The position numbers were made by a program, and so were the translations under genes. 64,000 bases of DNA from Stegostoma tigrinum (lineage: Eukaryota). Below the pieces are notes generated by a model. It worked only from the letters and a program-made list of their open reading frames with translations, had not been told where the DNA came from and searched no databases. Below are positions 29,857-53,498 of this stretch, piece after piece; the stretch's first letter is position 1, and each line of letters opens with the position of its first letter. The stretch spans positions 2,470,689 to 2,534,688 of the forward strand of contig NC_081369.1 of assembly GCF_030684315.1 (NCBI RefSeq), in the 5' to 3' direction.

Positions 29857-30790
29857 CGAATGCCAGCTTCACCAGAGCAGCCCATGTTTGAAAGGCACAA
29901 AATGGTCAACAGGTATTAAAACAAACTGGGAAAGCCTGCTCTAGCATTTCAGTGAAACACATTGGTACCTTTGAACAAGACTATTCCAAGGTCAGGAAAA
30001 GAGTTTAAATACTGACCATCCGAGACAGTTCTGATAAGAAGGTGCCATTGGATGGATAAGTAACTAGTTTGAGCCTCTAATGAAAGGATGCTGACCCCAG
30101 TAAACAAATAACATCAAGTATCAGTCTCAGTCCACGAACCAGCAAGATGAACTCCCTTGAACTTGCTGGAGCAAAAAGTTACATCAAAAGTTATTTTGCA
30201 GGAAATAGTTGCTTCTTAGAATCCACCCGCAATATTACATAGATTCTCGTTAAAAATTCCCGAATCACACAAGTAGTTTTAACATATAACAAAAGTATAA
30301 TACAAGCATGAGGGGAAAAACATTTAAACTTAGGTGTGAAAGTTAATTAGCCTCAGGAAACATTTTGTCTTACACCCTGAGCAAACTAGATTGTTCATTA
30401 CCATTAATTACAAACTGCTTATAGTAAGTGTAGCTGTAGGAGTTTACATTTTACAACAAACTTGATGATAGAAATTAACCTCATACTAATTAGTAAAAAC
30501 AAATTTGTTTATTATTTAGCATATATAATTAGGACAGAGAGAAATTGTAGAGGGAAGGCTGAATTTGATTTAAAAATGCAGATATAATGCAATGAATAAT
30601 AGAACTCAAGTGATAAGAAGCCTGAGACAGATCTGAAGGAGTGCAGCCAGTAACTTTGGAATGTGAATGTCTGGTGAACACTACATGAGCATGGGAAACT
30701 GGGGCTGTCGGTAGGAATGCTCATCCTTAATTTGGTGCCCCATGAGATTGGGTGCATGCATTAATGAGGAAGAACAGTGAATATAGATCA

Positions 30791-33535
30791 GAGATAATGG
30801 GAACTGCAGATGCTGGAGAATCCAAGATAATAAAGTGTGGAGCTGGATGAACACAGCAGGCCAAGCAGCATCTCAGGAGCACAAAAGCTGACGTTTCAGG
30901 CCAGGACCCTTCATCAGAGAGGGGGATGGGGAGACGGTTTTGAAATAAATAGGGAGAGAGGGGGAGGTGGACCGAGATGGAAAGAGGTGAAGATAGGTGG
31001 AGAGGAGAGTATAGGTGGGGAGGTGAGGAGGGGATAGGTCAGTCTGGGGAGGACAGACAGGTCAAGGAGGTGGGATGAGGTTGGTAAGTGGGAAATGGAG
31101 GTGCGGCTTGAGGTGGGAGGAGGGGATAGGTGAGAGGAAGAACAAGTTAGGGAGGAGGGGACGAGCTAGGCTGGTTTTGTGATGCAGCCGGGGGGTCGGG
31201 GGTGGGAGATTTTGAAGCTTGTGAAGTCCACATTGATACCATTGGGCTGCAGGGTTCCCAAGCAGAATATGAAGTGCTGTTCTTGCAACATTCGCGTGGC
31301 GTCATTGTGGCACTGCAGGAGGCCCATGATGGACATTTTGTCTAAGAAATGGGAGGGGGAGTTAAAATGTTTCACGGCTGGGAGGTGCAGTTGTTTATTG
31401 CGAACTGAGCGGAGGTGTTCTGCAAAGTGGTCCCCAAGCCTCTGCTTGGTTTCCCCAATGTAGAAGATGCCACTGTATTGTACAGTGGATACAATATACA
31501 ACATTGGCAGATGTGCTGGTGAACATCTGCTTAATATGGAAAGCCATCTTGTGGCCTGGGATGGGGTTGAGGGAGGAGGTGTGGGGGCAAGTGTAGCACT
31601 CCCTCCGGTTGCAGGGGAAGGTGACGGGAATGGTGGGGTTGGAGGGGAGTGTGGAGTGGACAAGGGAGTCACGGAGACAGTGATCTCTCCGCAAGGCAGA
31701 CAAGGGTGGGGATGGAAAAACATCTTGGGTGGTGGGGTCGGATTGTAGATGGCGGAAGTGTCAGAGGATGCTGTGTTGTATGCGGAGGTTGGTGGGGTGG
31801 TATGTGAGGACAAGGGGGATTCTCTTGGGGCGATTATTACAGGGGCGGGATATGAGAGATGTGTTGCGGGAAATGTGGGAGATACGGTCAAGGGCGTTCT
31901 CGACCACTGCGGGGGGGATGTTGCGGTCCTTGAAGAATGCGTCATCTGGGATGTGCGGGAGTGATATGCCTCATCCTGGGAGCAGATGCAATGGAGGCAA
32001 AGGAATTGGAATAGGTGATGGAATTTTTGCAGGGGGGTGGGTGGGAGGAAGTGTATTGTAGGCAGCTGTGGGAGTTGGTGGGCGTGAAGTGAACATCAGT
32101 TTCTAGCTGGTTGCCTGACATGGACACAGAGAGGTCCAGGGAGGTGAGGGATGTGTTGGAGATGGCCCAGGTGAACTTGAGGTTGGGGTGGAAGGTGTTG
32201 GTGAAGTGGATGAACTGTTCAAGCTCCTCTTGGGAGCAACAGGCGGTGCCGATACAGTCATCAATGTAATGGAGGAAGAGGTGGGGTTTGGGGCCAGTGT
32301 AGGTGCAGAAGAGGGACTGTTCCACGTAGCCTACAAAGAGGCAGGCATAGCTTGGGCCCATGCAGGTGCCCATGGCCACCCCCTTTGTCTGTAGCAAGTG
32401 GGAGGAATCAAAAGAGAAGTAGTGGAGGGTGTGGGCAAGTTCGGCTAGGTGGATGAGGGTGTCGGTGGAGGAGGACTGGTTGGGCCTGCGGGACAGGAAG
32501 AAGCGGAGGGCCTTAAGGCCTACTGCGTGCGGAATGCAGGTGTATAGGGACTGGACGTCCATGGTGAAAATGAGGCATTGGGGGCCAGGGAATTGGAAGT
32601 TCTGGAGGAGGTGGATGGCGTGGGTGGTGTCACGGACGTAGGTGGGGAGGTCCTAGTCCAAGGAGGAGAAAATGGAGTCCAGATAGGTGGAGATGTGTTC
32701 GGTGGGGCAGGAGGAGGCGGAGACAATGGGTCGGCCAAGGCAGGCAGGTTTGTGGATTTTGGGTAGGAGATAGAAGCGGGCAGTGCGGGATTGGGAAACA
32801 ATGAGGTTGGAGGCTGTGGGTGGGAGGTCACTTGAGGTGAAAAGGTGATGGATGGTGTTAGAGATGATGGTTTGGTGCTCAGGGGTGGGGTCATGATCAA
32901 GGGGGCGATAGAAGGAAGTGTTGGAGATTTGGCATTTGGCCTTGGCGATGTAGAGGTCAGCGGGTTTGATGGGGAGGTTGGGGTTGGAGCAGAGGGAGCG
33001 GAGGGCTGCCCATTCTGTGGGGGAGAGGTTCGAGTGACTGAGAGGGGTGGAGAGGTTGAGGTGGTTAATGTCTCGACAGCAGTTGGAGATGAAGAGGTCA
33101 AGGGAGGGTAGGAGGCATGGGGGTGGTGTCCAGGAGGAGGGCTTGTGTTGGAGGCAGGTGGAGGGATAAGTGGAGGGACGGTTGGGCTCCCGGTTAAAGA
33201 AGTAAGCGTGGAGGCGAAGGCAGCGGAAAAACTGCTCGATGTCCAAACGTGACTGGTATTCGTTGATGTGTCAGTGGAGGGGGACAAATGTGATCCCCTT
33301 GTTTAGGACTGACCGTTTGTTCTCAGTCAGTGGGAGGTCTTGGGGGGAAGGTGAAGATTCGGCAGGGCTCAGCGTGGCTGTCTTCTCTGGGGTTGCTGGT
33401 GGTGGGCGGTGTTCCATCAGCAGTGGGCAGAGCTGCGTTGGCGGTGCGGCGTCTGGAGTTGGACGAGCGGGGTGGGCGGCAGCAGCAGCGGTGAGGGTGA
33501 TGTTTGTGGTGTTTGCTGTGTTTGATTATTGGAAC
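30791..33535 (-). mobile_element. Near full-length degenerate Penelope-like element (RT + GIY-YIG)
   Basis: ORFs 32653-33246, 31942-32562 and 31166-31945 carry PKIHKP..GRPIVS, YIDD and YIGET motifs with frameshifts; absent from the paralogous blocks. Confidence 0.92.
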
Positions 33536-33859
33536 AGAAAATGTGTAAAATGCTGTATTTCACTGTAAAAATCAGGGTGTGTCATTGATCTCCCTTCCGA
33601 TTCAGGGAAGGTTCTTTGGCCCTCTCCCTGCATCAAGTGGGTTTTGCTTAAATAAACATCTTCCACATGGCTGAATCCTGCCTGCCTCCTCATACTTTGT
33701 CCCTGATGGACAGTACACTCCCTACATCAATACTTGCACAAAAACGGTTTACGCGGTTTGGTATCCAGTTCACAGCCTTGAATGTGGATTCATTCACTTT
33801 GCTTCCTATAATTGGTGAGTAAATGTTGATACATTACCCAAGGCCCCTCCTTTCAAACA

Positions 33860-35215
33860 AAACCAAAGGAACTGCGAATGTTGTAAATCAGGAATAAAAA
33901 CAAAATCAGGAACTTTCCTTGTTCTATCCAATTGTGGCCCCTGCCCACAACTCTTTTTCCAATACATCAATGATATTATCGGTGCTGCTTCCCTCTCTCA
34001 TCTAGAATTGGAAAACTACATCGATTTTGCCTCCAATTTCCACCTTGCCCTCACTTTCACCTGGTCTATCTCGGACTCACCCCTACACTTCCTCGATATT
34101 TCTGTTTCCATTTCTGGGGATAGACTGGCCACTAATATCCATTACAAACCCATTGACTCCCACAGCTACCTGAACAATATATCCTTACACCTTACTTGCT
34201 CTAAAGACTCCATCCCAATCTCTCAGTTCCTCCACCTCCTTCGCATATGTTCAGATGAAGACAGCTTCAACAGGGAGCCTCCGAAATGTCCACCTTCTTC
34301 CTCATCCAAGGATTTCCCAGCTCCATTGTCGACAGGGGCCTCAACCAGGGCTGACCCATCTCCCACGCTTCCGCCATCACCCCTTCTCTTCCCTGTCACA
34401 ATAGCGATGGGGTTCCACTTGCCCTCAACTAGCATCTACAAACAGAAGATTATCAGGCGCCGTTTCCACCACCTGCAGCAAGATGTCAGAATGAGACACA
34501 TATTCCCTTCCCCTCCCTTGTCAACTTTCCACAGGGACCATTCCCTGTGGGACACCCTAGTCCACACTTCCTTCACCCGCAATACCCCCTCACAGCCCTA
34601 TGGCACCTTCCCCTGTAACTGGCAAAGGTGCAACACCTTCCCATTTACCTCCTCTCTTCCCTGTATCCAAGAGCCCACGCTTACCTTCCAGGTGAAGCAA
34701 CACTTCACCTGCACTTCCCAGAACCTAGTCTACTGCATTCGCTGCTCACAGTGTGGTCTCCTCCACTTTGGGGAAACAAAGCATAGAATAGGTGACTGCT
34801 TCGCAGACATCTACGTTCTGGTCACCAGAAAGATCCTGAACTACCCATCACCTTCCACTTTAACACACCACCTTGCTCCCTGACTAACATATCTGTCTCT
34901 GGCTTGCTGCAGTGCTCCTGCGAAACCCAATGCAAGCTGGAAGAGCAACACCTCATTTTCTGCTTGGGGACCCTACAGCCCTCCAGTCCCAATGTTGAGC
35001 TCAATAATTTTAGGACCTAAACTCTGCCATGTCCAGCCCCCTACCCCATAGACCAGGCCTTGTAACCACATAGCCTGCTATTATGCTCAACTGTTATTCG
35101 TCACTAATAGTCGGCATTAACAACTATTCACACTCCCCGTTGTTATCAACTCTTTGTCTGTCCAACTGCTTTTCTCTCTCTTTAGGCTCAATCCTATTGT
35201 TTACTCCTTACCCCA
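33860..35215 (+). mobile_element. Older Penelope-like fragment (RT thumb + GIY-YIG)
   Basis: ORF 34008-34883: FLDISVSISGDRLATNIHYKP..NLVYCIRCSQCGLLHFGETK. Confidence 0.85.
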
Positions 35216-35579
35216 TTGGCTGGAATCTATCATCTTGTTACTTTTAAAATATACAATAAACTTGAGGACATGTGTTCCAAAAGTTCCTGGATCTGTGAAA
35301 GAAACAAAAAATGCCTCATGCTGTTTTCAATGTTCACTCTCTGATTTTTTTTGTAAACCATGATCCCTCGTTCTGAATCTTCCAAAAGAGGAAAATCTCT
35401 ACATCTACCTTGTCAAGACCCCTCAATATTTTACATGTTTCAATCAATCAACCTGTTCCTGTTTGCAGCTGTCCAATCTTTTCCCACAAGTTAAACAGAA
35501 TTTGCCATCATCTGTATTGCCTCTTCCGAGCTAATTCACAACTTTCCAAGCAGTCTTTCAAAACTCTTCAGACTGATAA

Positions 35580-35811
35580 AGATAACAAGGTGTAGAGCTG
35601 GATGAACACAGCAGGCCAAGCATCATCAGAGAAGCAGGAAAGCTGACATTTCAGGTCTGGACCCTTCCTTTGAATTTTTTCAGAACATTTTCTGAAGAAA
35701 TGTCCAGACCCAAAACTTTCCTGCTCCTCTGATGCTGCTTGGCCTGCTGTGTTCATCCAGCTCGAAACCGTGTTATCTCAGATTCTCCAGCATTGGCAGT
35801 TCCTACTATCT
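35580..35811. mobile_element. Mini Penelope fold-back (older)
   Basis: Inverted termini; TSD ctcttcaga(c)tgataa; absent from the paralogous arm near 50145. Confidence 0.75.
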
Positions 35812-36259
35812 CTCTTCAGATGATAATCATTTTTGTTTTTGTGTACTTGTAAGCTTTTGATAGATGAATTAGAAAAATCATTCATGCCAGCAACAAGTTC
35901 ACAATAAAACAATGTTAATAGATTAGATAGTTATATTTTCCAAATCAATTCAATCCAGAGAACTTGCCACAATATAATCAGTGAAGCACAGTAATTTATT
36001 TGGAAGCTATATTGGTTGTGTGCCATTTTTGAGAAAACAATACACAAATGTATTGAAAGTAATGCTTAGCCATGTATCAACACAATGTGTTCAAATATAA
36101 ATTGATTTCTTTTTCTGATTTCATTTCCACTTCAATAAAGAATAATGCTACATTTTCATTGTTCGGAAACATTCATGAGTCATGCCATCTTGTCCTACTA
36201 TGCCATATTACAATGAGAGTGCAATGTTAAACAGTCCTGGTGTGCGAATGGAGGAGAGA

Positions 36260-37012
36260 GGGTGAGAAAAGTCATAAAGCCAAAGTACAAAGGGATCTGG
36301 GAGTCCTAGTCCAGGATTCTTTAAAGGTTAACTTGCGGGTTCAGTCCGTGATTAAGAAAGAGAATGTAATGATGTCACTTATCTCAAGAGGGTTGGAATA
36401 TAAAAGCAGTGATGTGCTTTTGAGACTTTATAAAGCTCTACTTAGGCCCCATTCAGAATACTGTGTCCAATTTTGGGCCCCACACCTCAGGAAGGACATC
36501 CTGGCACTGGAGTGTGTCCAGCTAAGATTCACACGGATGATCCCTGGAATGGTAGGTGTAACCAACAATGAACGGCTGAGGATCCTGGGATTGTATTCAT
36601 TAGAGTTTAGATGGTTGAGGGGAGATCTAAGAAACATACAAGACATGCATGGCATAGAAAGGGTGGATGCTGGGAGGTTGTTTCCATTCGGTGGGGAGAC
36701 TAGGACCCATGGGCACTGCCTGAGAATTAGAGGCGGTAAATTTAGAATGGAAATGAGGAGACACTTCTTCAGCCAGAGAGTGGTGGGCCTATGGAATTCA
36801 TTGCCACGGAGCACAGTGGAGGCCGGGACGTTAAATGTCTTCAAGGCAGAGATTGATAATTTCTTGATCTCACAAGGAATTAAGGGCTATGGGGAGAGTG
36901 AGGGTAAGTGGAGTTGAAATGCCCATCAGTCATGATTAAATGGCAGAGTGGACTTGATGGGCCGAATGGCCTTACTTCCACTCCTATGTCTTATGGTCTT
37001 ATGGTCTTATGA
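36260..37012 (+). mobile_element. CR1 LINE 3' end
   Basis: ORF 36240-36917 RT C-terminus; tail of ttatggtc repeats; absent from the paralogous arm. Confidence 0.9.
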
Positions 37013-38000
37013 CCAGTGATGGTGCATCAGTCTGCACTGTCTGGGCACAGTGCCACTCTATACTGAACTAAAATTTGAAGAAGAAACTGCCAATTATGAA
37101 CTGAAGCAAATTAACTGAGCAAAATGAACCACCAAAATATCAGAGAGATAAGCAATCAGATCTCTTCAGCTTTCTGGATGTGGAATAATCAACACAAACA
37201 AACATTCTCACAGTAACGGCAAGAGGACAAACAGGATTAAAACTGCTGCCACAGTGGAAGCAGAAAGAAGTATCTATTCAAGCTAGAAAAAAAAAAGAGT
37301 GAAACACAAACAAGTTAAGGACAGTAGCCAAAAGAAGCCTTGTGAACATTTGTCACAGTAAATCCCATCATTTCAAGGCCAAATGCACAGACTGGAGAAA
37401 GGGAAAGAAAATATCAGCATTGCCCCGTGTTGCCAATGCAAGCAGAATTATGATGAATATCTGACGATACACAAACACAGAGAAAAACACTCAGTAATAA
37501 CCTTCATGATCAATATGTCAAACTTCATGCAAATTGAAAGGGCATAAGGAGGTCCTGGACAGTCAAAAATAATTGAGTTGTGATTTTTAGTTGTAACTGT
37601 TGCACAAATTTTAAAGCTGAAATGAATTGGATCCAGGTGATATTACTCGAAGGGAAGAAATTCATCCATATATTTGCAAAATTATGAAAGGGTTTATACA
37701 AGTAAAATAACTGTTTAAATTTGATAAGAAACATAATCATCTCTGTAATAAAAACTGCTTCTATCTTTTTAGCGTAGTTTTGTTTTCCCAAATCGGAGGC
37801 TGCTTTTCACAACTGCATACAGTGGACTATTTTCTTGGTGTTTGGATTTCGATGATGGACTGGAATCATTGAATTTCAGAGCAAGGTAAATCAGTCTGCA
37901 GTCTGTCATGCTTTGTTTTGTCTGAAAAACAGCATTGAGACTGAATTACCATTCATTTAAATCATTCTAGATGAAAATTGCATGCAGGCAACTTTCAACA

Positions 38001-38174
38001 TCATTTCATAATCAACTCATTATGATGAATGAACTCATTATTTATACATGAGATCTTAAAAGTACCTCTGTATATTGTGGTATAGTCCTGTTGTTTTAGC
38101 ATTATGTCATCCTCAGAGCCAACTCGATTAAGAGCAGCATATGTCAGCTTATCCTCAGGCATCTTCCGTTTTCT
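38001..38174 (-). CDS. Terminal cytoplasmic exon with ITIM LTYAAL (38130-38147)
   Basis: ctctag|AGA phase-0 acceptor matches the phase-0 end of exon 40787-40741; RKRKMPEDKLTYAALNRVGSEDDIMLKQQDYTTIYRG...MK*. Confidence 0.75.
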   Translation of the reverse strand, partial: RKRKMPEDKLTYAALNRVGSEDDIMLKQQDYTTIYRGTFKISCINNEFIHHNELIMK

Positions 38175-41100
38175 CTAGAGAGTTAAGATTCAATATTCAT
38201 TTGGTTGTTTTATTTTGGTGTAAAGAGATGCATATACATTCTTAGCATGGACAATTAGTTTGTCGTACTATAAAACAACAAATGCTGGAGATCGCAGTGG
38301 CTCAGGTAACATCCACGAAGGGAGAGCAAGTTAATGTTTCCAGACTAGATGATTCTTCATCACAGTTCTGCTGAAGATTCATCCATACTCAAAATACGAG
38401 CTTTCTCCCTCCGTGGATGCTGTCTGATCTGCTGTGATCTTCAGCATTTGTTGTTTTCAGGACAGATTTCAATATCTACAGTGATGTGTTCCTACAGATT
38501 GTTGTACTGACTTTGCTAACACTTCACTACAATCATTACATTTTCCTCTTTCTGACTTTGAACTGTTTCTTACGAGGAACAGCACATCTATTCACAAGCA
38601 AACATTATTTTCTGATATTATTAATGTTAATCTAATTTTAATTTAAAGTTACATTTGTCAGTTCAATTTAATTTGGGTTTTAAATTCTGAGGGGTGAATT
38701 CCTGTCTTATTACATTCTGCTACAAATTGAACATGCAATAACATTTATTAAATGCAAAAAAAAACTTGACTTTGTTTAGGAACGATAAAAATAAACACAG
38801 ATCCCATTGCTTCACACTAAAATTATAAGTGGCAATTATTTGAAATGAATTAATAACGTCGTTCTGAGGAAAGGTCACGACCTAGAACATTAACTCTGAT
38901 TTCTCTCTGCAGCTGCTGCCAGATCTGCTGAGCTTTTCCAGCAATTTATTTTTTTGTCAGTGGATAGATGGAGGATGGACGGTGCAGGATTGGCCTAAAC
39001 ATTCCCTCACATTAAATTAGCTACATTAGTGAGCCAACTCGAGAGAAGGAATAACTGTACTTACCACTGCTATTTGAAATTTAATTTTAGAATCACCCTG
39101 TTCATTTCTGAATAAGGGAAAGTAATTATTTCAATGGGCCATCTGAATGGTAATAAATAAAAGTGCTGAAATCTGAAGTGAAGACACAAGTGTAGTGCAT
39201 TTTCAGTCAGAAAATGTGCCAACTATTTTGGGAGGAATATATTCAGGTAACTGACAATGAAAAAATGTGACAAGTATGGTGCGCTTTTGTCGAACAGTTA
39301 AGCCACAATATTTTAGTGCTCTAAGGTATACTCTTTGGTCTTCTGTGGAGTATTTCTCAGTCATAGCTAATTTTGTTTTCTCTTTCCATCTGATCCACTG
39401 CTCATGAAACAATAAAACACAGGCTAGGCATTGCACCTGGACATCAGAGGACTTTATTCTGTCACTGACAGCAGAGCAGCTGCAACATTTCACAGAAAGA
39501 TGTGCAGTAATGGAGTAAAGACTTTGGCATAATTTTCTGAAGACCTCCAAGAAAGGCTTGTCATTTATGCTGCACCTGCAGTACGTCAGTGAGTGTATTC
39601 TGCATGAAGTACTATTTTTAATAGGATGTGAGCCTCAGTAGCAAGGCCAGTATTTGGTGCCAATAACTGTTTACTATTGAGAGTCCAACAGCACATCAGG
39701 TTTCTTGACTGACTGCAGTCCAACATTGTTGTCAGGGAGAGTGTTGCAATAAAAGAGGAGGGTACTTTTTGCAGTATTATACACAAGGAAGGAAATGTAT
39801 TTTTTTTTAAATAAAGCAACTTCAGATCCACGACTGAAACTGAGATGATAAAGCATTTGAATTAACTTCAAGACTCTGACTGTTTCAAAATGTATTTAAA
39901 GAGGCTACATCTGCTGATCTGCACTGCATTGAATTGCAGTCAAGAAAAACAATGTGTAATTACATTGTGTCATCTGGACAGTGCAAACAAACCACTGTCG
40001 GGTAATCCTGAGTAAGTCCCACCTGCTCCTTTTCAGTTGCCATAGCTCGGAAGGTGTTTCTCATAAGTTACTGATATCCACATTTGAAAATTAAAAATAA
40101 GAGATGTTTGCATCACAACAGCTTGTTGATTTTTTTTCCCCCAAGATTGTATGTTGCTGTAGCAGAGAGTTCACTAGCAGAGAGACAGCCGAGAGCGTAA
40201 GCTTTCTAAGGAAGCCAATTTGTACAAGCCGTCTGCATAATACATTGAGTTCTTTGGCAGAGTTGCTTGGTAGGAGACAGACGTAATCACCTAACTCTGA
40301 CTAATGCTTAAGTGAATTGAGAATGGCATAGAAAGGGAGAAGAAAACAATATTGTCTCTTTATTTTCCATGGAACCTATCAGAGTGGTCATCACCACAAT
40401 ATAATCAACATTGATTATAATGTAATCAATGTGGCAAAATTATTCAAAATTATTCAGCACTCTGTCACTTGTGAAGTTTGAAAGAAAACAGAAATCAAAG
40501 CTGGTTGTCGGCTTCAAACCCATGTTTGATGATTCAACATCATTGTAACAGTTGTGAAACTTGCTGCCATTTTCTATTTGTTTTATTTTGTTTTTATTTA
40601 GTTGAAGTTGTGTTTTTGAGAGCTGATGAAATCTTCATTACTTAACTTGACATGTTAGGAATACACATTTGTGTTCCCAGCTTAACTGTTCAACTAGACT
40701 TGAAAGTTAAAACAGACAGAGTAAACTAAATTTGTCTTACCACATCATCATGCTGAGCTGGATTTATTGTTTTTTTCTGTGCCCCACCTGAGAAACAACA
40801 AAGACATAAGTCAGCAACAAAAACAGCAGATAATTGTACTCATCAGCCCCAACCAATGAAACCAAAAGATATTTGACTTCTATTCGACATTTGTAAACAG
40901 GGTACAACAGGAAAAACAGTTTCACAATACAGCTCTAAATGTTACACACAGATGCTTTGAATTTATGTTTTGAGGGTTAAAGCTATAGAAACATTTTTCA
41001 GCAAAGAATTTTACCATCACAACTTTGATCTACACCGATACAACTTCTCAAAGTGAAACTTCAAATTTTCTTCTTATTTTATGTTTGATGTGAAGCACGG

Positions 41101-44100
41101 TATATGTTTGGAAGAGGTTTCACATTAATTAGTTGTTTAAATTATACAATTCAGAAATTCAGTTCCCAATTGTGTTAATTTCAGTGAGGCATTTCTATCC
41201 TATTCATACCTTTGGAGATAAAGAACAGAAAACCCTTGACAATCATCACGGTCAATATTAGAATTGCAATTGCACGAGCGACACAACTGGCAGCCATAGT
41301 AACACTGATTTTAGAGGCAAAATCTGCAATGATAACATAAATTCAAAATTAGGGATTGCACCAGAAACTGAAGATACGCACGTTTTAAATGCCATGTGCA
41401 TCGTTCGCAATTGGACTGCCTTGAACCTGTGGTAAATACCATACATAAAGTCTCAGCATTTCAATTTTGTTATCACTTTGTTCAACTAATCCGTATGCAG
41501 CCAGATTAAAAATGCCTGGAATTTACAGAAATAGGTAAATAATAAAAGTACCTCAACTAATGACACATTTTAAATTAATAGAGCTAATCGCAATCAGTGT
41601 TCAGTTCTCTCAGCTATATTGAAAAATTACAAGTTATTTGGTGGGAGATTAGTTGGATTGCACACAGATCAAGGTCAGAAACCATACATAATGGAATCTG
41701 CGGTCAGATTTCCTTGTATTTTCCATGGAGGTAAACTTCATTTGAAATAATTTTAATCTCTTTGCAGCTATGACCCAATCATCTATGACCCTATGTTTTG
41801 TGTTTAATCAAGTATGTGTCACTCTGATGAATAAGGAAAATAAACTGGATGCATGGAGGTGTACCATAGAGTCAGACAGGTTTACAGCATGGAAACAGGA
41901 CCTTCAGCCCAACTTGTCCATGCCGCCCAGTTTTCACAACTGAACTAATCCCATTTGCTTACATGTGATCCATATCCCTCCGTACCCAACCTATCCATGT
42001 ACCTATCCAAATATTTCTTAAATGACAAAATAGTACTCATCTCCATTACTACCTCTGACAGACTTTTCCAGATACTCACATCACTCTGTGTGAAAAAAAT
42101 TCCTCCTCTTTTGTATCACCCCTCTCTTACCTTAAACCTATTCCCCCAACCCCCCCCCCCCCAGTTTTAGACTCCCCTACCATGGAGAAAAGCTGTTGAA
42201 TCTACTTATCTGTGCATCTCATGATTTTATAGACCTCTATAAGGTCGCCCTTCAGTCTCCTATGGTCCAGGAAAAAAAGAAGTCCCAGCTTATCTAGCAT
42301 CTCTTTAGAACTCAAGCCTTCCAGTTCATGCAACATCTGAGGAAATATTATCTGCACGCTTTCTAATTTAAGCATATCCTTTCTGTAGTAGGTGACCAGA
42401 ACTGCACACAGTTACCTGACATTTGGCCTGTCCAAATTCAATACTGTTCATGCTTTCACAAGAATTAATATTGATCATGCAGCCCTTTGCAAGTCATCAG
42501 TGTATGCAGAAAAGAATGATGTGACCAGTGTTGAAGACTGATATTTAATTTTGGTAGTCACATGTGATAACTACATATCAGCTCCAAACAGCATGAAGAA
42601 AGAAAACTTTAAACCATACAATAGGACTTAAATTCAATTTTGACATAACTGCATGCAAATGTGGAGGCAACAGCCACGTGGTATTATCGCTAGACTGTTA
42701 ATCCAGAGACCCAGACAATGCTCTGGGGACCTGAGTTCAAATCCCAACACAGCAGATGGTGGAATCTGAACTCATGGTCTAATGGTGACCGTGAATCCAT
42801 TGTTGATTGTTGGGGGAAAAAACCCATCTGGCTCACTAGTGTCCTTTAGGGAAGGAAACTGCCACCCTTACCTAGACTGGCCCATATGTGATTCCAGAGC
42901 AATGTGGTTGACTCTGAACTGCCCTCTGGGCAATTTGGGATGGGCAATAAATGCTGCCTAGCTAGTGATGTCCTCATCACTAGAATGAATAAAAAAAACT
43001 GTCTTTTGATATTATCACATGCAAATGACTGCCATAATCACTTTTTACATATTTACCCATTTTAAATGATACATGAGCATTCGATGTACCACATATTATG
43101 AAATGTTACCTTTATTTATCACAGTGTAGCTGGCATTTGTCGGAAATGAGCTTGAAACATGATATACTTGACAGGTGTAAACTGTCTCACTCTTGACTGC
43201 CTCTCGCAACTCTAAGGTGCTGATGACTTCATAAAGATCCTCAGGTTTTGCCAGCTGTTCATTCCGAAATCCTGTCAATATGTTTGTGCCATTTTTATAC
43301 CAAGTAAGGTTAAAGTCTTTTGGGTAAAAGTCTGATGTCCTGCACTGGATTCGGAGAGAAGCAGAAAAAAGGTCTTCGGATGGCATGGAGACAATTTTCA
43401 GAGGAGCTGGTAGTGCTGAAAGGTAAATAACATAAATTAGATGAATTGATTTTGCATCTTCTCCAAAAAACGTACTGTTTATTTTAGCAAAACAATCATT
43501 TCGAGCACATCAGTTGTATTAATTTTTGCTATGAACATGACATGAAATTGATGCTACATTTATCAGATTTTAAAAATCCCTCAATTCCTCTCAATACACC
43601 TCCTGCATATTTAGAAAAAAAAGCTTTCAGAATTTTTTTCTACTTAATAACATGACCTTTCTTTTGCAAACAGGATAAAGAATTGGATCTGGATCCGACG
43701 AATTTAGCAAAGACCATGCAAGTGATTGAACCAAGAATTTGGCTCTTCTTGTGAGATAAGAAACATTTCAAAATGCATAGTTTTTCAAATACCTTCAAGA
43801 AGTTTCATCCTGTAACTCCATATTCGTGTGCAAAGTAAAATTTGAAAGTACTGCATTCAATTTTGCTGCAAAATGCACAAATGCATAAAAGCTAAATGCA
43901 TAAAACTGAAGCAACCCATGACCAAATGCAGCAAGAATTGGACAACAGCCGGGTTTGGGCTAAAAAAGTTGACTGTAACATGCAGGCTACACAAATGGCA
44001 GGCAACCATCTTCTCAAATGAGAGACAATATAATCATCCACCCCTTAATATTCAGTGGCATCACCATCCGTGAGTTCCCCACTATCTATAGTTTGGCAGT

Positions 44101-45617
44101 TACCATTGAGCAGAAACAGAACTGGGCGAGCCATATAAATAGAGCCATAGGTCAGAGGCTAGGAATATTGCAGCAAGTAAATCAACTGCTGGCTTCCCAA
44201 AGCCTGCCCGCCATCTGCAAGGCACATGTCAGGAGTGTGTTGGAATGCTCCCCATTTGCCATGCCTACGGGTCGAAAAGCACTTAAGAAGTTGGACTCCA
44301 TCCAGTAAAAAGTCACTCACTCACTGATTGGCACCACATTCAGTCACTCCACCACATATACTCAGCAGCAGCAGCGTGTAACTTCTAAGATGCACCGCAG
44401 AAATTCACCAAAAGCCCTCAGTCAACACCTTCCAAACGCACGATCACTACCATCTAGAAGGGCAAGGGCAGTAAGTATTTGGAAACACCACCAGCTGCCA
44501 GTTTCTCCCAAGCCACTCACCATGCTGACTTGGAAATATAGCACTGTTCCTTCACTGACACTGGGTGAAAATCCTGTAATTTCCCCCTAATCGCATTGTG
44601 ATTCTACTTCCAGCACATGGGCTGCAGCTGTTCAAGAAGGCAGCTCACCACCATCTTGTCAAGGGCAACTAGGGACACGCAATAAATGCTGGGCAGCCAC
44701 TGATGCCCACATCCCACAAGGGATTTATTTTTAACACAGAGTAGATCTCAAATTTTGAGGATTTCCTGGTTCTCCAAGGTCTCCATTTTCTTTAACGTTT
44801 CATTTTAAACAACTGCCAATATTATACGCAAAATGTCTGTGTCTAATACATTGTTTTGATTCCTGTTTTAGATTGTTTTCAAGCAGCTAAGACTCCGTGT
44901 TTATCTGCGGTGACACTTACCATATACAATAAGTTGCACAGCAGCTTGCCCAAGCTTTTGTTTCTGATATGCGACTGCACAGTGATACGTTCCAGCGTCC
45001 CGGACTGTCACGTTCAGGAGTTTAAGGGAGGCTTCTCCTCTAATTACACGGAAGAGCTTTTTGCTGTCCTCCTGCAGAACGGTTTTATTATCTTCTTTCC
45101 ACCAGTAAGCTGTAACATTTGAATAATCAAATTCGGCGGAGAAAGTACAGTGCATGAGAACTGATGAACCTCCCTGCACCGTTTTTCGCGTAAGGTCCGG
45201 ATTCACTTTGGCCGAATTGCCCACAGCAGCTGTCAACCAAGGAAACACACTGAGATTAAATAAGAAGGACAGTCTGCACCGCCTCAGTAACATCTTTATT
45301 CTAAGCCATTGATGCAACAGCAATTTACCACATTTTACTCTTCGACTAATTCTCCCATTTTTAAACTATTGTCCTAATTGAATGTTACATTTTTTTTCTG
45401 ACAGACCCAATGATAATTGCGTTCTCGGAGTAACTGACTTTAAAAAAAAGACAACAAGAATAAAAAATATCCATTTATTAATCAAATTTATCAAATCTAG
45501 TTGTAAATTTACATTGCGTCTTGCTTGTGATCAGTGAATGCTCAGCAAAGAGAAATACGTACCTGAGCACAAGATGCCCAGCAGACAGACATCCCATAGT
45601 GAATGACACACAAACAT
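38001..45617 (-). CDS. Intact multi-exon IgSF receptor, V-C1-TM-ITIM (SIRP-like/antigen-receptor-like architecture, non-rearranging), 334 aa. Exons 45617-45563 (leader), 45229-44921 (V), 43415-43110 (C1), 41323-41210 (TM), 40787-40741 (Cyt1), 38174-38001 (Cyt2 + stop)
   Basis: All introns are GT..AG with matching phases 1,1,1,1,0. Total 1005 nt, no internal stop. Leader MFVCHSLWDVCLLGILCS; V ...VLMHCTF..AYWWKED..ASLKLLNVTVRDAGTYHCAV..VQLIVY; C1 ..RIQCRTSDFYPKDFNLTWYKNG..YEVISTL..VYTCQVYH; TM ISVTMAASCVARAIAILILTVMIV; tail ..EDKLTYAALN.. Confidence 0.85.
39065..39097 (-). CDS. Candidate optional 33-nt cytoplasmic micro-exon (GDSKIKFQIAV)
   Basis: aacag|GGT..GTG|gtaagt, symmetric phase 0/0, fits between Cyt1 and Cyt2; supported by splice signals only. 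Confidence 0.3.
41210..41323 (-). CDS. Transmembrane exon (contains Arg)
   Basis: attgcag|AT..AAAG|gtatga; 114 nt; DFASKISVTMAASCVARAIAILILTVMIVKGFLFFISK. Confidence 0.8.
42664..42998 (+). mobile_element. tRNA-derived SINE of a second family
   Basis: B box gagttcaaatccc; tail gggcaataaatgctg..gaatgaataaaaaaaa shared with the LINEs ending at ~13450 and ~44725. Confidence 0.75.
43110..43415 (-). CDS. Ig C1-set domain exon of the intact receptor
   Basis: ctttcag|CA acceptor and AAG|gtaac donor; 306 nt; C-x4-FYP, W-x-KNG and YTCxVxH hallmarks of C1-set. Confidence 0.92.
43905..44725 (+). mobile_element. Same LINE family, 3' end, in the V-C1 intron of the intact gene (antisense)
   Basis: GQRLGILQQV..KAHVRSVLECSP; aligns with 12600-13450. 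Confidence 0.8.
44921..45229 (-). CDS. Ig V-set domain exon of the intact receptor
   Basis: ttgacag|CT acceptor and TATG|gtaagt donor; 309 nt, phase 1/1; B-strand Cys, C-strand Trp and DxGxYxC motif present. Confidence 0.92.
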
Positions 45618-47550: not shown

Positions 47551-48603
47551 GATAAAAAAATGTGAGGCTGGATGAACACAGCAGACCCAGCAGCATCTCA
47601 GGAGCACAAAAGCTGAAGTTTCTGGCCCAGACCCTTCATCAGAGAGGGGGGTGGGGTGAGGGTTCTGGAATAAATAGGGAGAGAGGGGGAGACGGACTGA
47701 AGATGGAGAGAAAAGAAGATAGGTAGAGAGGAGAGTATACGTGGGGAGGTAGGGAGGGGATAGGTCAGTCCAGGGAAGACGGACAGGTCAAGGAGGTGGG
47801 ATGAGGTTAGTAGGTAGGAGATAGAGGTGCGGCTTGGGGTGGGAGGAAGGGATGGGTGAGAGGAAGAACAGGTTAGGGAGGCAGGGACAGGCTGGACTGG
47901 TTTTGGGATGCAGTGGGTGGAGGGGAAGAGCTGGGCTGCTTGTGTGGTGCAGTGGGGGGAGGGGACGAACTGGGCTGGTTTAGGGATGCGGTGGGGGAAG
48001 GGGAGATTTTGAAGCTGGTGAAGTCCACATTGATACCATTGGGCTGCAGGGTTCCCAAGCGGAATATGAGTCGCTGTACTTGCAACCTTCGGGTGGCATC
48101 ATTGTGGCACTGCAGGAGGCCCATGATGGACATGTCATCTGAGGAATGGGAGGGGGAGTGGAAATGGTTCGTGACTGGGAGGTGCAGTTGTTTATTGCGA
48201 ACCAAGCGGAGGTGTTCTGCAAAGCGGTCCCCAAGCCTCCGCCTGGCTTCCCCAATGTAGAGGCAGCCACACCGGGTACAATGGATACAGTATACCACAT
48301 TGGCAGATGTGCAGGTGAACCTATGCTTAATATGGAAAGTCATCTTGGGGCCTCGGATAGGGGTGAGGGAGGAGGTGTGGGGGCAAGTGTAGCACTTCCT
48401 GCGGTTGCAGGGGAAGGTGCCAGGTGTGGTGGGGTTGGAGGGCAGTGTGGAGCGAACAAGGGAGTCATAGAGAGAGTGGTCTCCCGGAAAGCAGACAAGG
48501 GTGGGGATGGAAAAATGTCTTGGGTGGTGTGGTCAGATTGTAGATGGCGGAAGTGTCTGAGGATGATGCGTTGTATCCGGAGGTTGATGGGGTGGTGTGT
48601 GAG
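47551..48603 (-). mobile_element. Penelope-like 3' fragment (GIY-YIG + 3' end)
   Basis: ORF 47873-48343 NVVYCIHCTRCGCLYIGEARRRLGDRFAEH; near-identical to 60596-61650. Confidence 0.9.
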
Positions 48604-50554
48604 ACCCCCTCGTTCGCACAACAACCTCTGTATGAAAAAGTTGCCCTTAGACCTCTTTTTAAATCATACCCCTATTACCTTAAACCTTCACCCTCTAGTT
48701 TTGTAATCCTCCACCTCGGGGAAATTAGTGATTATTCATCCTATCCATGGCCTATGATTTTATAAATCTGTATAGGGCCACCCAATACCCTCCGACACTC
48801 CGAAGAAAATAGCTGTAGCCTATTCAGTCTCTCCTGATTTATTAAACCCTCCAGCCATGGTAAATGTCTCGTAAATCTTTTCTGAACCCTTTCAAGTTTA
48901 ACAACATCTTTCCTATTGCAATGAGATCATGGTTTTAAGAGAAACACTATTCCAGGTTTTTATGGCATTCAAATTACACCAGTTAGCTCTAGTTGCTCTC
49001 TTATAGAACAGATATTATTAACCTAGAAAGAATGCGTTAAAACGTACTGGGGGACATTCGTAGCCTATACCATATCGCCAAGAGAGCAGTTAGCAACCAT
49101 TCAATTTATAGTGAGCCACATGCAGGCCAATTGACAATGGCTGAATTACTTCCACAGGACATTAGTAAACTAATGGAAGTAACTACATGAAAATCTTGGA
49201 CTTCTTGTTCACAGATCACTGAAGGTGGCAGGGCTGGTTAAAGGAATGGTTAAGAAACATACAGGGCACATGCTTATGTCTGGAATGGTACAGATTATAA
49301 GAGGAGAGAGGCTACTTTGGAATTTTACAGGACTTTCGTTAGTCCAGAGCGGGAGTGCTATGTTCATTAAGATTTCCTAGGATCCTCCGTGGACTGGAAG
49401 ATTTGAGTTATAAGGAGAGGCTGGATAGTGTGGGCCTTCTTTCCCTAGACCATTGGAGACTGAAGGGTGACCTTACATAGGTCTGAAAAATCATGAGAGG
49501 CAGAGGTAAGTAGATAGCTAACAGCTTTTCCTCATAGTAAGACAGCCTAAGATTCAAAGGCATAGGTTTGAGGTAAAAGGGGAGAGATACAAACGAATCT
49601 AGAGGAGCGATATTTTGACAAACAGGATGATGTGTGTTTGGAATAGCCTGCCAGAGGTAGTGGTGGTTAATTCACTGTAGAGTGGCCCTTTGCCCAGACA
49701 GAGCAGACTGATGCTCCATCCGTGATTGCCCTTTGTTTAGCATTGCAATCTCATTGTAATATGGTACAGTAGGACAAGATGGTATGTCTGATGAATGTTT
49801 CTGAATCATGAAAATGTGTTCTTCATTGAAGTGGGAATGAAATTAGAGAAAAGAAATCAATTTACATTTGAACAAATCATGTTGACATATGCCTAAGTAA
49901 TTCTTTCAATACATTTGTGTGTTCTATTCTCAAAAATGGCATATAACTAATACAGATTCCAAATAAATTACAATGCTTCTCTTATTATATTGTGAAAAAT
50001 TCTCCAGACTCAATTGATTTGGAAAATAGAGCAATCTAATCTATCACCATTGCTGCATTGTGAATTTGCTACTGACAGGAATGCATTCTGTGGCTTGCCT
50101 ATCAAAAACTTAGAAATACAAAGCCATGAAAATGAATTAGCAGTCTGAATAGTTTTTGAAAGGCTGCTTGAAAGTTGTGCACTGGCGATGGAAAGGCAGC
50201 ACAGATGATGACAAATTCTGTTTGTCTTGTTGGAAAAGATTGGACAGCTGCAAAGATGAAGAAGTTGGTTGACTGAAACATGTAAAATCTTCGGGGGTCT
50301 TGACAAGGTAGATATGGTGACATATCGTCCCATGGAAAAATCTAAAACGAGGTACAATGGTTATAAAAAAAATCAGAGTTTGACCATTTAAAACAGCGTT
50401 AGACATACATTCTCTCACAGGTGTCTGAGTCTTTTGGAATACTATTCCTAAAAAGGTAACAGAAGCAAGGTTGAATATTTTTAAGTCACCAACTGATAGA
50501 TTCCAGTGGAGCAAAGAAGTGAAAGATTGCCACGAGTACTGTTTAAATTTGGGG

Positions 50555-51665
50555 TTAGAACATACATAAAGCATAACAGCACAGTACAGGTCCTTCGGCC
50601 CTCGATGTCGTGCCGACCTGTCATACCGACCTGAAGCCCATCTAACCTACACTATTCCATGTACGTCCACATGCTTATCCAATGACGACTTAAAGTTGGC
50701 GAATCTACTACCGTTGCAGGCAAAGCATTCCATTCCCTTACTACTCTCTGAGTAAAGAAACTACCTCTGACATCTGTCCTTTATCTTTCACCCCTCAATT
50801 TAAAGCTGTGCCCCCTCGTGCTCGCCATCACCATCCTAGGAAAAGGGTCTCCCTATCCACCCTATCTAACCCTCTGATTATTTTATATGTTTCAATTAAG
50901 TCACATCTCATACTTCTTCCCTCTGATGAAAACAGCCTCAAGTCCCTCAGCCTTTCCTCGTAAGACATTCCCTCCATACCAGGCAACATCCCAGTAAATC
51001 TCCTCTGCACCCTTTCCAAAGCTTCTACGTCCTTCTTATAATGCGATGACCGGAACTGTACGCAATACTCCAAGTGCGGCCGCACCAGAGTTTTGTACAG
51101 GTGTAGCATAACCTCTTGGTTCCAGAATTCGATCCCTCTATTAATAAAAGCAAAAATGACAAACAGCAGTGGACCCAACACCGACCCTTGCAGTACACCA
51201 CTAGTAACTGGTCTCCAGGATGAACATTTCCCATCAACTACCACCCTCTGTCTTCTTTCAGCAAGCCAATTTCCGATCCAAACTGCTATATCTCCCACAA
51301 TTCCATTCCTCCACATTTTGTACAATAGCCTACTGTGGGGAACCTTATTGAACACCTTGCTGAAATCCATATACACCACATCAACCGGTTTACTCTCATC
51401 TACCTGTTTGGTCACCTTCTCAAAGAACTCAATAAGGCTTGTGAGGCACAACCTTCCCTTCTCAAAACCGTGCTGACTATCCCTAATCAATTTATTCTTT
51501 TCTAGATGATTATAAATCCTATCCCTTATAACCTTTTCCAACACTTTAGCAACAACTGAAGTAAGGCTCACTGGTCTATAATTACCAGGGTTGTCTCTAC
51601 TCCCCTTCTTGAACAGGGGAACCACATTTGCTATCCTCCAGTCTTCTGGCACTATTCCTGTAGAC
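50555..51665 (-). mobile_element. CR1 LINE RT fragment with an in-frame internal deletion
   Basis: ORF 50828-51751 PEDWRIANVVPLFKKG..GSVLGPLLFVIF|AFINRG; the FADD region is missing. Confidence 0.9.
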
Positions 51666-53498
51666 TTTGTGGCTACAATCAGATTTGTGATGACCTTGTT
51701 TGAACAACTTTTCTGATTTTGTGTCCCCAAAGGACTGCCTTCTCGTCCCAATCAATTTATTGAATGTTCAGACTAATAGAGCAGGCTCGAGACACTGACT
51801 TTCTGACACTTGCTTCAAATTCGATTGTTCACATCAACATAACCTGATTTCCTCGTGTGTAAAGAAAAATACCAATAAGGAAGAATTGGGGGAAATCATA
51901 CATTGCTTTAGATTTTAATTAGGTAAACCATAAGGTTCCACAACGGAGTTTATGATGAAGTAATTTTATGCAATTGTGTGTACGGTGAATTTATTGTCCC
52001 TAGGCACCTTCTTAACAGAATTGCCTTGGATTATTGGTGGGAATGCTCTTTTGCTGACCTGTGAATTGTCTTGTTCCAAGGTACCAGTGTGTATCACTTA
52101 AAAAGCATACTTTTATTGTTTTTAACCAAGATTTGTTTGTCATTTTTCAATTTCAGATACCTTATTGTTTCATGTTTTGTAATGTAAACAATGTTTCTTC
52201 CTGTGTCACATGGAAGATCAGTGAGCACCATGAATGTTAATTCATTCCCTGAGTGTAAAGGTTAGCCGATCGGCAACAAACAGAAAATAGATTTTTAAAG
52301 AAGGGTTGTGTTTGGCACTGGAGAGTCTAACTGGTGGGTCAAGCAAAATTCCAAGTTTGGACGTCAGCTATTTCACCTTGTTGTCTGCTTACAAAGGGTC
52401 TCAGATAATGTATCAACATTTATTCACATGAAATTACAAGATTCAAAGTGTGTGAATCATGTGTGAAAGGAGAGTATTGACAACTGGGGACAAAGTCTCA
52501 TGAGGCAGGCAGGATTCAGGCAAGTGGAAGATGTTAATTCAAGCAAAAACCAGTTGATGCAGTGAGAGAGCCAATAAATCTTCCCCGAATCAGAAGGGAG
52601 ATCACTGGCATACTCTGATTTTTACAGTGAAAATACATCATTTTATACATTTTCTGTTACAACTACCAAATACTGTGTAGCCACTGTCTCTCTCCCTTAA
52701 TCCAGACACCCAATCTAGTGGAACACCTAATCAATGATGATCATTCCTATGGACAGCCCCAGGTTCCCATGATTTTATGGTGTTTACCAGACATTGTAAT
52801 CTCTAAGCCTTGGGATTTATCTGCACACCCTATTCATTCACTTTCCAAAGTTACTGGCTACACTCCTTTGTATCTGTCTCAGGCTTCTCATCACTTGAGT
52901 TCTATTATTTATTGTGTTACATCTGCTTTCTTTTATCAAATTCAGCTATTCCTCCAATATTTTCCACAGTCCTAATTGTACAGTAAAAGTATAAAAGACA
53001 GTTAGTAGTTTTATCAATCTACTATAAGGTTAATTTCTATCATAAAGTTAGTTATAAAATGTAAAGTTGTGCAATTATCTGTAATGTAAGCACGTTGTAA
53101 ATATTAGGTTGTGAACAATCTATCTTGCTCAGGGTGGAAGACAGTATTTCCTGAGGCTAATTAACTTTTGCATCCAAGTTTAAATGCTTTTCCCCTCATA
53201 CTTGTATTATGCTTCGGTAATATATTAAAGCTACTTCCATGATTAAGGGAGTTTTAACCAGAGTCAATTTAATATTTCAGTAAGTTTCAAAGATGCAAGT
53301 ATTTACAACAAAGTAACTTTAGCTGCAGTTTTTTACAGCTCTTTAGCAAGTGAAAGAAAGTTAATCTCGCCGGCTCATGGGCTAAAACTGACACCTTGTG
53401 TCATTTGTTTTTTGTGACGATCATCCTTTCATCAGAGGCTGTGATTAGTTACTTAACCATCCCTAGGCACCTTCTTAACAGAATTGCCTTGGATTATT

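What the first reader, a model, noticed from the sequence alone, without database searches (positions are those of the whole stretch)
38001..45617. Intact non-rearranging V-C1-TM receptor with an ITIM, antigen-receptor-like architecture
Seen: six exons splice in frame into 334 aa with leader, one complete V exon, one C1-set exon, TM and tail; the ORF track shows only two of the exons. Known: C1-set domains are largely confined to Ig/TCR, MHC/beta2m, tapasin, SIRP and B7-type proteins, and a V-C1-TM layout is that of a TCR chain. Here the V is germline-complete, has no RSS, and the tail has an ITIM, which TCR chains lack. Inference: a poorly characterised cartilaginous-fish family of innate (SIRP/NK-type) receptors resembling the proposed pre-RAG antigen-receptor precursor.
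Basis: partly seen in the sequence, partly recalled or inferred. Interest (0 to 1): 0.85.

Follow-up and report, generated by a model that had tools for sequence, protein, structure and literature searches.

The report
Shark SIRP-like V-C1 inhibitory receptor gene
This is a real, intact gene for a cell-surface immune receptor of the zebra shark. It has one variable-type and one constant-type antibody-like domain and an inhibitory tail, is already predicted in RefSeq as 'SIRP beta-1-like', and belongs to a large, unnamed family found in sharks and rays rather than being a lone relic of the antigen-receptor ancestor.

Summary
On the minus strand, leader, V, C1, TM and two tail exons join through canonical splice sites into 334 aa. 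Pfam calls V-set (4.9e-11) and C1-set (2e-13). The V exon is germline-complete with no RSS, and the tail carries one ITIM (LTYAAL).

The gene is already modelled as RefSeq XP_048402851.2, 'signal-regulatory protein beta-1-like', Stegostoma tigrinum, 331 aa. That model leaves exon 6 at an internal donor and adds a seventh exon.

It belongs to a multigene family found here only in sharks and rays, with at least five subfamilies. Some members have ITIM tails; others have short tails and a charged TM. RefSeq names them inconsistently (SIRP-like, tapasin-related-like, NCR3LG1-like, Ig lambda-like, uncharacterized). I found no paper describing the family.

Most members end the V domain with a J-like GxG(T/S)xLxV motif. 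This copy has lost it. A frame shift between exons 6 and 7 has also cost it the distal tyrosine motifs. Four decayed relatives surround it in the window.

The nearest named relatives are SIRPα/γ, UrIg2, Ig light chains and B7-H3, all distant, with no one-to-one orthology.

No RNA runs were available, so splicing and expression are unproven. The scan noted the same family elsewhere in this genome.

The parts
45563..45617 (-). Exon 1: start codon (45617-45615) and signal peptide, 18 codons plus 1 nt, donor gtacgt
   Evidence: Sequence read. Identical to the N-terminus of RefSeq-derived P0166.
44921..45229 (-). Exon 2: complete V-set domain in one exon. Canonical Cys, Trp and DxGxYxC are present. 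The G strand ends LGQAAVQLIVY, so the family's J-like GxG motif is degenerate. The exon is followed directly by a splice donor, with no RSS.
   Evidence: (V-set 4.9e-11)
43110..43415 (-). Exon 3: C1-set domain with FYPKD..W..NG and YTCQVYH motifs
   Evidence: (C1-set 2e-13). 87% identical to whale-shark P0086.
41210..41323 (-). Exon 4: stalk and transmembrane helix. It holds a family-conserved Cys and an Arg (41276-41274) where the whale-shark orthologue has Gly. A conserved Lys marks the cytoplasmic end.
40741..40787 (-). Exon 5: short juxtamembrane cytoplasmic exon, 16 codons, ends in phase 0
   Evidence: Matches P0166.
38066..38174 (-). Exon 6 as in RefSeq. It holds the single canonical ITIM LTYAAL (38147-38130) and ends at donor acagag|gtactt in phase 1.
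   Evidence: Genomic contigs of two samples cover 37860-38301; two of the three show no difference, and X4's 16 differences lie at 38305-38331, away from the donor.
37866..37921 (-). Exon 7 coding part in RefSeq (acceptor tttttcag, 17 codons plus stop at 37868-37866). It is read in a frame shifted relative to paralogues.
37769..37921 (-). Ancestral frame of exon 7. It is still open and holds LIYLAL and PLYAVV, 73% identical to the tail of paralogue P0162, but is out of frame with exon 6 in this gene.

Best explanation
The locus is an intact member of a multigene family of non-rearranging V(J)-C1-TM immunoreceptors found here only in elasmobranchs. The family is SIRP-like in layout and tail and sits in birth-and-death clusters.

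The gene is zebra shark RefSeq XP_048402851.2, 'signal-regulatory protein beta-1-like'.

Inferred mechanism: the membrane-distal V domain binds an unknown ligand. A Src-family kinase phosphorylates the tail ITIM (LTYAAL), which recruits an SH2 phosphatase of the SHP-1/SHP-2 or SHIP type and damps activation of the cell that carries it. Sister genes with short tails and charged TM residues would give the opposing, adaptor-coupled signal, making this a paired-receptor system.

This copy is derived. Its J-like GxG motif is gone. A frame shift between exons 6 and 7 leaves one ITIM instead of the four tyrosine motifs of its paralogues. It has also gained an Arg in the TM.

Shown: gene structure, domain types, family membership, and the decay of its neighbours. 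Inferred: expression, ligand binding, phosphatase recruitment and pairing.
For: - Gene structure and domains.
- Identity to P0166 = XP_048402851.2 over leader, V, C1, TM and tail exons.
- Family members with the same layout occur in Heterodontus, Chiloscyllium, Hemiscyllium, Rhincodon, Scyliorhinus, Heptranchias, Cetorhinus, Carcharodon, Narcine, Mobula, Pristis and Hemitrygon.
- Alignment A1 shows invariant Ig residues, the J-like motif in most members, and two TM/tail types. One has an ITIM-rich tail; the other has a short tail with Arg/Asp in or beside the TM.
- In the C1 tree the elasmobranch sequences form one clade (92/85) with several starred subclades. This gene pairs with paralogue P0162 and groups with whale-shark and epaulette-shark orthologues.
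- SIRPs are the best non-elasmobranch hits of both the single-sequence and the profile searches.
- SIRPα and SIRPγ align contiguously over V plus C1 with the canonical member P0121.
- SIRPα tails in hand (P0173, P0183) show the same twofold LTYA(D/A)L ... xYA(S/E) pattern as the paralogue tails.
- The AlphaFold model has two confident beta-sandwich domains and a TM helix.
Against: - There is no transcript evidence. No RNA run holds the locus and the runs laid are genomic contigs.
- A single ITIM is a weak phosphatase docking site.
- The family V-domain HMM scores SIRP V domains only 15-19 bits, below unrelated multi-V proteins of turtles (40-51 bits).
- In the C1 tree SIRP is not sister to the family.
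- For this copy the best solved-structure match is B7-H3, with Ig light chains close behind SIRPα.
- ITIM tails of the xTYAxL type occur in many unrelated receptor families (my own knowledge), so the tail similarity may be convergent.
Confidence: 0.7

Rival explanations
1. It is a decaying copy on its way to being a pseudogene. It is open by chance of recency and has no remaining function.
For: - Exon 7 is out of frame with exon 6 relative to paralogue P0162, and the distal tyrosine motifs are lost.
- The J-like GxG motif is degenerate.
- Arg replaces Gly in the TM.
- All four other family copies in the window carry stops or frame shifts.
- No RNA evidence was available.
Against: - All coding exons are open with canonical splice sites.
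- All invariant Ig residues of the family are kept.
- The first ITIM is intact.
- RefSeq keeps it as a protein-coding model.
- The V exon is 100% identical in protein to that of paralogue P0162, which points to recent duplication or conversion rather than long neglect.
Confidence: 0.2
2. The family is the elasmobranch co-orthologue of tetrapod SIRPs, having lost or never gained the third domain. This gene would then bind CD47 like SIRPα.
For: - SIRPs are the only non-elasmobranch proteins found with a single family member as query, and the best with the profile.
- SIRPα aligns over V plus C1.
- SIRP d3 scores best among outside C1 domains (41-44 bits).
- The twofold tail pattern is similar.
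- The family has paired inhibitory and charged-TM forms, as in SIRPα and SIRPβ (PMC12975943).
Against: - The family has one C1 domain, not two.
- SIRP V domains score only 15-19 bits against the family V profile.
- The C1 tree does not join SIRP to the family.
- The word-indexed searches favour proteins sharing short exact words and are not a fair ranking.
- Synteny could not be examined.
Confidence: 0.15
3. It is a B7-family ligand, B7H6-like, displayed to NKp30-type receptors, rather than a receptor itself.
For: - The V exon's best solved-structure matches, after multi-Ig adhesion proteins (titin, CEA, DCC), include PD-L1, B7-H3, B7-H4 and ICOS-L.
- B7-H3 is the top match of the whole protein.
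- The predicted extended V-C arrangement superposes best on PD-L1 (TM 0.74).
- RefSeq names some members 'NCR3 ligand 1-like'.
- The nurse shark has several NCR3 genes (accessions listed in PMC12227049).
Against: - B7-H6 itself is not among the 60 best solved-structure matches of the V exon, the C1 exon, the protein or the family profile.
- Repeated ITIM tails and sister forms with charged TM and short tails are the signature of paired receptors.
- The C domain scores as C1-set far above the CD80-like C2-set model.
Confidence: 0.1

Closest known systems
SIRP family (SIRPα, SIRPβ, SIRPγ; solved structures 2wng, 4i2x)
   Same: - Non-rearranging membrane-distal V domain, with a J-like G strand in most family members, followed by a C1-set domain.
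- Single-pass TM.
- Inhibitory forms whose tails repeat LTYAxL ... xYAxx twice, beside forms with a short tail and a charged TM.
- Best non-elasmobranch sequence hits.
   Different: - One C1 domain instead of two.
- V domains are barely related (15-19 bits).
- Not sister in the C1 tree.
- Much larger and more diverse gene family.
- This copy has only one ITIM.
- Ligand unknown.
UrIg / UrIg2, non-rearranging antigen-receptor-like genes of elasmobranchs (PMC12227049; structure 9dmx)
   Same: - Germline-joined V(J) exon with a split leader, followed by C1-type domains and a TM.
- Elasmobranch.
- UrIg2 is the top solved-structure match of canonical member P0121 (3.6e-18) and a high match of the family profile.
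   Different: - Per PMC12227049, UrIg2 has nine to eleven C domains, and UrIg and UrIg2 are described as single paralogous genes linked to the MHC and to the Ig/TCR complex.
- That paper does not mention ITIM.
- The family here has one C domain, ITIM tails and many copies in clusters.
- This copy lacks the GxG of the J motif.
Ig light chains and TCR chains
   Same: V plus one C1 domain. For TCR chains, also a TM with a basic residue. Light chains match the family profile over both domains at about 1e-20 and are the top Foldseek matches.
   Different: No V/J split, no RSS, an ITIM tail, and an extended rather than elbow-bent predicted domain arrangement.
B7 family (B7-H3/CD276, PD-L1, ICOS-L)
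   Same: V plus C ectodomain, similar V sequence, and an extended domain arrangement.
   Different: The C domain is clearly C1-set by Pfam. The family has ITIM-rich tails and paired charged-TM forms. B7-H6 is not among the best matches.

Membership tests
SIRP family | Ectodomain of one V-set and two C1-set domains (PMC12975943) | tested here: not met
   One V and one C1 exon lie between leader and TM. The same holds in all 16 aligned family members.
SIRP family | Cytoplasmic ITIMs that recruit SHP-1/SHP-2 (α form), or a basic TM residue that binds DAP12 (β form) | tested here: inconclusive
   One canonical ITIM and a TM Arg are present together. Paralogues have four tyrosine motifs. Recruitment and adaptor binding cannot be tested here.
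SIRP family | Phylogenetic grouping of its domains with SIRP domains | tested here: not met
   The C1 tree puts the family in its own clade, with SIRP d2/d3 outside and weak support. The V profile scores SIRP V at 15-19 bits. The reference set was small.
SIRP family | Binding of CD47 by the V domain; conserved synteny with the SIRP cluster | not testable with these tools
Rearranging antigen receptors (Ig/TCR) | V segment ending in an RSS, with separate J segments | tested here: not met
   The V exon includes the G strand and ends in a splice donor. RSS-like patterns are at chance level and none lies in the gene.
VJ-type non-rearranging V domains (UrIg, NKp30, SIRP) | J-like G strand, GxG(T/S)xLxV | tested here: not met
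   This gene reads LGQAAVQLIVY. Ten of the 16 aligned relatives keep GxG in this strand, about six of them the full motif, for example TGTGTQLTV and NGSGSQLIV.
B7 family / B7H6 | V and C domains grouping with B7 members; B7H6 as the closest member | tested here: inconclusive
   B7-H3, PD-L1, B7-H4 and ICOS-L are among the best V matches. B7-H6 is not in the best 60 of any search. No B7 reference sequences were available for a tree.
Elasmobranch V(J)-C1-TM receptor family (unnamed) | Leader, one V exon, one C1 exon and a TM exon with a conserved Cys and terminal Lys, in phase 1-1-1; clustering in the C1 tree | tested here: met

The most novel reading that the evidence does not exclude
The family found here only in elasmobranchs, to which this gene belongs, descends from the same non-rearranging VJ-C1 stock as UrIg, Ig and TCR. 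It would preserve, as a large paired-receptor system, what antigen-receptor-like molecules did before or beside RAG-mediated rearrangement: germline-encoded recognition coupled to ITIM or adaptor signalling.
Probability: 0.12. Interest if true: 0.85.

Novelty: new variant of a known kind. Interest (0 to 1): 0.45.

Why it matters
Non-rearranging genes that join a V(J) domain to a C1 domain are rare. They are central to the debate on how antibodies and T-cell receptors arose, and the shark genes UrIg and UrIg2 were recently proposed as relics of that step.

A large, diversified shark-and-ray family with the minimal V(J)-C1-TM layout has inhibitory and putative activating forms. It carries only automatic, mutually contradictory database names. 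Such a family would add a testable set of candidates for that history and a likely major innate receptor system of cartilaginous fish.

This single gene adds little by itself. It is already predicted in RefSeq and is a derived copy of the family.

Tried and rejected
- RNA evidence: the look-up of sequencing runs found no RNA run, only four genomic-looking runs of one study. Read laying on 37700-43500 showed contigs only. There were no exon-exon joints and no indel at the exon 6 donor. A few base differences in the C1 exon lie near contig ends and may come from the 90% identical paralogue.
- Homodimer test of residues 20-228 of P0166, two copies: no verdict, score 0.00. This is not evidence either way.
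I therefore saw no flanking genes, no synteny, and no DNA of the paralogues for dN/dS.
- Papers on shark B7H6 (PMC3709836, PMC4594805) are not held.
- Literature searches for a described shark SIRP-like or paired V-C1 family found none. The UrIg2 paper does not mention SIRP or ITIM.
- The ESM Atlas gave only generic V-C1, Ig kappa-like, SIRP, CD80 and butyrophilin clusters.
- Foldseek ranked light chains, UrIg2 and PD-L1 at nearly the same E-value, so the fold does not discriminate.
Whole-protein steps used the database protein P0166, which a search tool returned.
- The N run at 27980-28178 was left as it is.
Full report
**What is there**

The gene lies on the minus strand.

| Exon | Coordinates | Splice signals |
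|---|---|---|
| 1, leader | 45617-45563 | donor gtacgt, phase 1 |
| 2, V | 45229-44921 | acceptor ttgacag, donor gtaagt, phase 1 |
| 3, C1 | 43415-43110 | acceptor tttcag, phase 1 |
| 4, stalk/TM | 41323-41210 | phase 1 |
| 5, cytoplasmic | 40787-40741 | ends in phase 0 |
| 6, last | 38174 to stop at 38003-38001 | acceptor ctctag |

The residue count is 334, exactly as stated. The phase 1-1-1 pattern and the split leader are those of Ig-superfamily receptor genes.

Pfam scores the V exon as V-set (4.9e-11) and the next exon as C1-set (2e-13). That is well above the CD80-like C2-set model. The ITIM LTYAAL is at 38147-38130.

The V exon includes the G strand and is followed at once by a splice donor. 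RSS-like heptamer-spacer-nonamer patterns occur in the window at the number expected by chance, and none lies in the gene.

**It is already a predicted gene**

A full HMMER scan with the V exon found family members, and a follow-up search with one of them returned P0166. This is RefSeq XP_048402851.2, 'signal-regulatory protein beta-1-like' of Stegostoma tigrinum, the zebra shark.

P0166 is identical to the window's leader, V, C1, TM and cytoplasmic exons, so the window is zebra shark. It leaves exon 6 at the donor acagag|gtactt (38066|38065, phase 1) and adds a seventh exon (37921-37866), giving 331 aa.

All whole-protein steps used P0166 as returned by the tool.

**A frame shift in the tail**

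Paralogue P0162 lies on the same chromosome. Its V exon is 100% identical in protein to this gene's, its C1 is 90% identical and its TM is 70% identical.

P0162 continues after exon 6 into a last exon with two more tyrosine motifs. That exon is present here at 37921-37769. It is still open in the ancestral frame (LIYLAL, PLYAVV) and is 73% identical to P0162.

In this gene, however, exon 6 ends in phase 1 where the ancestral frame of exon 7 needs phase 0. RefSeq therefore reads exon 7 in another frame and stops after 17 codons. The read-through form also stops early.

Either way this copy keeps one canonical ITIM instead of the four tyrosine motifs of its relatives. Genomic contigs from two samples cover 37860-38301 and show no difference at the exon 6 donor; two of the three are identical throughout, and the third differs only at 38305-38331. 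The shift is therefore not an assembly slip, although these samples may include the assembly's source.

**The family**

Members with the same layout occur in at least twelve shark and ray genera. Their automatic names contradict each other: SIRPα-like, SIRPβ1-like, SIRPγ-like, tapasin-related-like, NCR3 ligand 1-like, MHC class II beta-like, Ig lambda-like, TCR beta-like and uncharacterized.

The alignment of 16 members shows three things.

- The Ig residues of both domains are invariant.
- In most members the V domain ends in a J-like strand, GxG(T/S)xLxV.
- There are two membrane/tail types. One has a TM with a conserved Cys and terminal Lys plus a long tail of repeated LTYAAL ... VYAE units. 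The other has a short tail with Arg or Asp in or beside the TM.

That is the pattern of paired inhibitory and activating receptors.

In a maximum-likelihood tree of C1 domains, the 31 elasmobranch sequences form one clade (support 92/85). It contains several well-supported subclades that include both sharks and rays. This gene pairs with P0162 and groups with whale-shark and epaulette-shark sequences.

No chimaera or bony-vertebrate member was found. The searches have limits, so absence is not shown.

**The neighbourhood**

The window holds four more copies of three subfamilies. All are disabled by stops or frame shifts.

- V 2489-2212 and C1 965-690, minus strand
- V about 7242-7748, plus strand
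- V 28566-28867 and C1 29503-29844, plus strand
- C1 54669-54360, minus strand

The rest of the window is mostly retroelement ORFs. Unchecked notes of this scan place further family clusters 7.5 kb, 209 kb and about 7.5 Mb beyond the window's end, and on other pieces of the genome. This is a birth-and-death cluster in which the focal gene is the only open copy within 64 kb.

**Relation to known families**

- Word-indexed searches. The only or best non-elasmobranch hits are SIRPs: rodent SIRPα at 1.5e-11 with one member, turtle and primate SIRPs at 3e-26 and 7e-21 with the profile. A tapasin-related protein follows at 2e-10. These searches favour proteins that share exact short words.
- Unbiased comparison with solved structures, family profile. 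It matches antibody chains, UrIg2 (1.7e-25), SIRPα (3e-22, over V plus C1), light chains (about 1e-20), SIRPγ and B7-H3.
- Canonical member P0121. It matches UrIg2 best (3.6e-18), then SIRPα (4.6e-16) and SIRPγ in one contiguous V-C1 stretch.
- This copy. It matches B7-H3 (5.5e-15), SIRPα (7e-14) and light chains.
- Domain by domain. The family C1 profile scores SIRP d3 at 41-44 bits, and SIRP d2, tapasin-related and teleost IgH C domains at 22-33 bits. The V profile scores SIRP V at only 15-19 bits, below unnamed multi-V proteins of turtles.
- Structure. The AlphaFold model is confident over both domains and the TM helix. Its Foldseek neighbours are light chains, UrIg2 and PD-L1 at nearly equal E-values. 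The extended domain arrangement superposes best on PD-L1.
- Tails. SIRPα tails share the twofold LTYA(D/A)L ... xYA(S/E) pattern with the family. Such tails also occur in many other ITIM receptors (my own knowledge).

I conclude that the family works like SIRP-type paired receptors and has the V(J)-C1 layout of antigen-receptor chains and UrIg. It is not demonstrably an orthologue of SIRP, B7H6 or UrIg.

**Mechanism**

Most likely this is an inhibitory immunoreceptor. The V domain binds a ligand, the ITIM is phosphorylated, and an SH2 phosphatase is recruited. All three steps are inferred.

The TM Arg (41276-41274) replaces a Gly of the whale-shark orthologue. It lies in the outer half of the helix and is not a conserved family feature. 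I would not read it as a dual signalling device without evidence.

A one-in-five chance remains that this copy is drifting towards the fate of its neighbours.

**Literature**

The UrIg2 paper (PMC12227049) describes non-rearranging VJ-C genes of elasmobranchs. It does not mention this family, SIRP or ITIM. Searches for a described shark SIRP-like or paired V-C1 family found nothing relevant. Two papers on shark B7H6 are not held, so an earlier description under another name cannot be excluded.

**Limits**

- No RNA data were available.
- Reference sequences for Ig, TCR, UrIg and B7H6 could not be brought into a tree.
- The dimer prediction gave no verdict.

Noticed in passing
window 690-2550 (-): Relic of another subfamily, most like horn-shark P0178 ('Ig lambda-1 light chain-like'). 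The V exon is in two pieces in different frames (2489-2415 and 2430-2212). The C1 exon (965-690) has three stops.
   Followed up: partly
window 7242-7748 (+): V exon relic of a third subfamily, most like P0181 and the second half of epaulette-shark P0164. It carries two in-frame stops.
   Followed up: partly
window 28566-29844 (+): Pseudogene of the focal subfamily, next to the N run at 27980-28178. The V exon has a frame shift (28566-28697 and 28721-28867). The C1 exon (29503-29844) has two stops and has lost its first Cys.
   Followed up: partly
window 54360-54669 (-), perhaps 55467-55595 (-): C1 exon 60-74% identical to the focal one, but with an in-frame stop and a frame shift. A weak V match lies upstream.
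   Followed up: partly
P0162 (XP_059507783.1), not in the window: A paralogue on the same chromosome has a V exon 100% identical in protein to the focal gene, while C1 is 90%, TM 70% and tail 71% identical. This suggests recent duplication or gene conversion limited to the V exon. The first 108 residues of that RefSeq model match repeat-like DNA at 19074-19315 and 21160-21284 of this window, so they may be spurious.
   Followed up: partly
P0164 (XP_060693506.1, Hemiscyllium ocellatum): This RefSeq model, named 'cell adhesion molecule-related/down-regulated by oncogenes-like', looks like a fusion of two neighbouring family genes of different subfamilies: V-C1-TM followed by V-C1-TM-tail.
   Followed up: no
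window 41276-41274 (-): The TM Arg, noted by another first-stage finding as a 'dual signalling signature', is Gly in the whale-shark orthologue. One horn-shark member has Arg one position earlier. The family-conserved charged residue is the Lys at the cytoplasmic end of the helix.
   Followed up: partly
window 30000-37000, 47800-52000, 57900-62900: Long ORFs of reverse-transcriptase-bearing retroelements lie on both strands, some with strong GC skew. Several share a conserved C-terminal motif, GETKxRLGDRFAEH.
   Followed up: no
window 43253-43297: Contigs of two runs show four base differences in the C1 exon near contig ends. They may be allelic, or may come from the 90% identical paralogue.
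   Followed up: no
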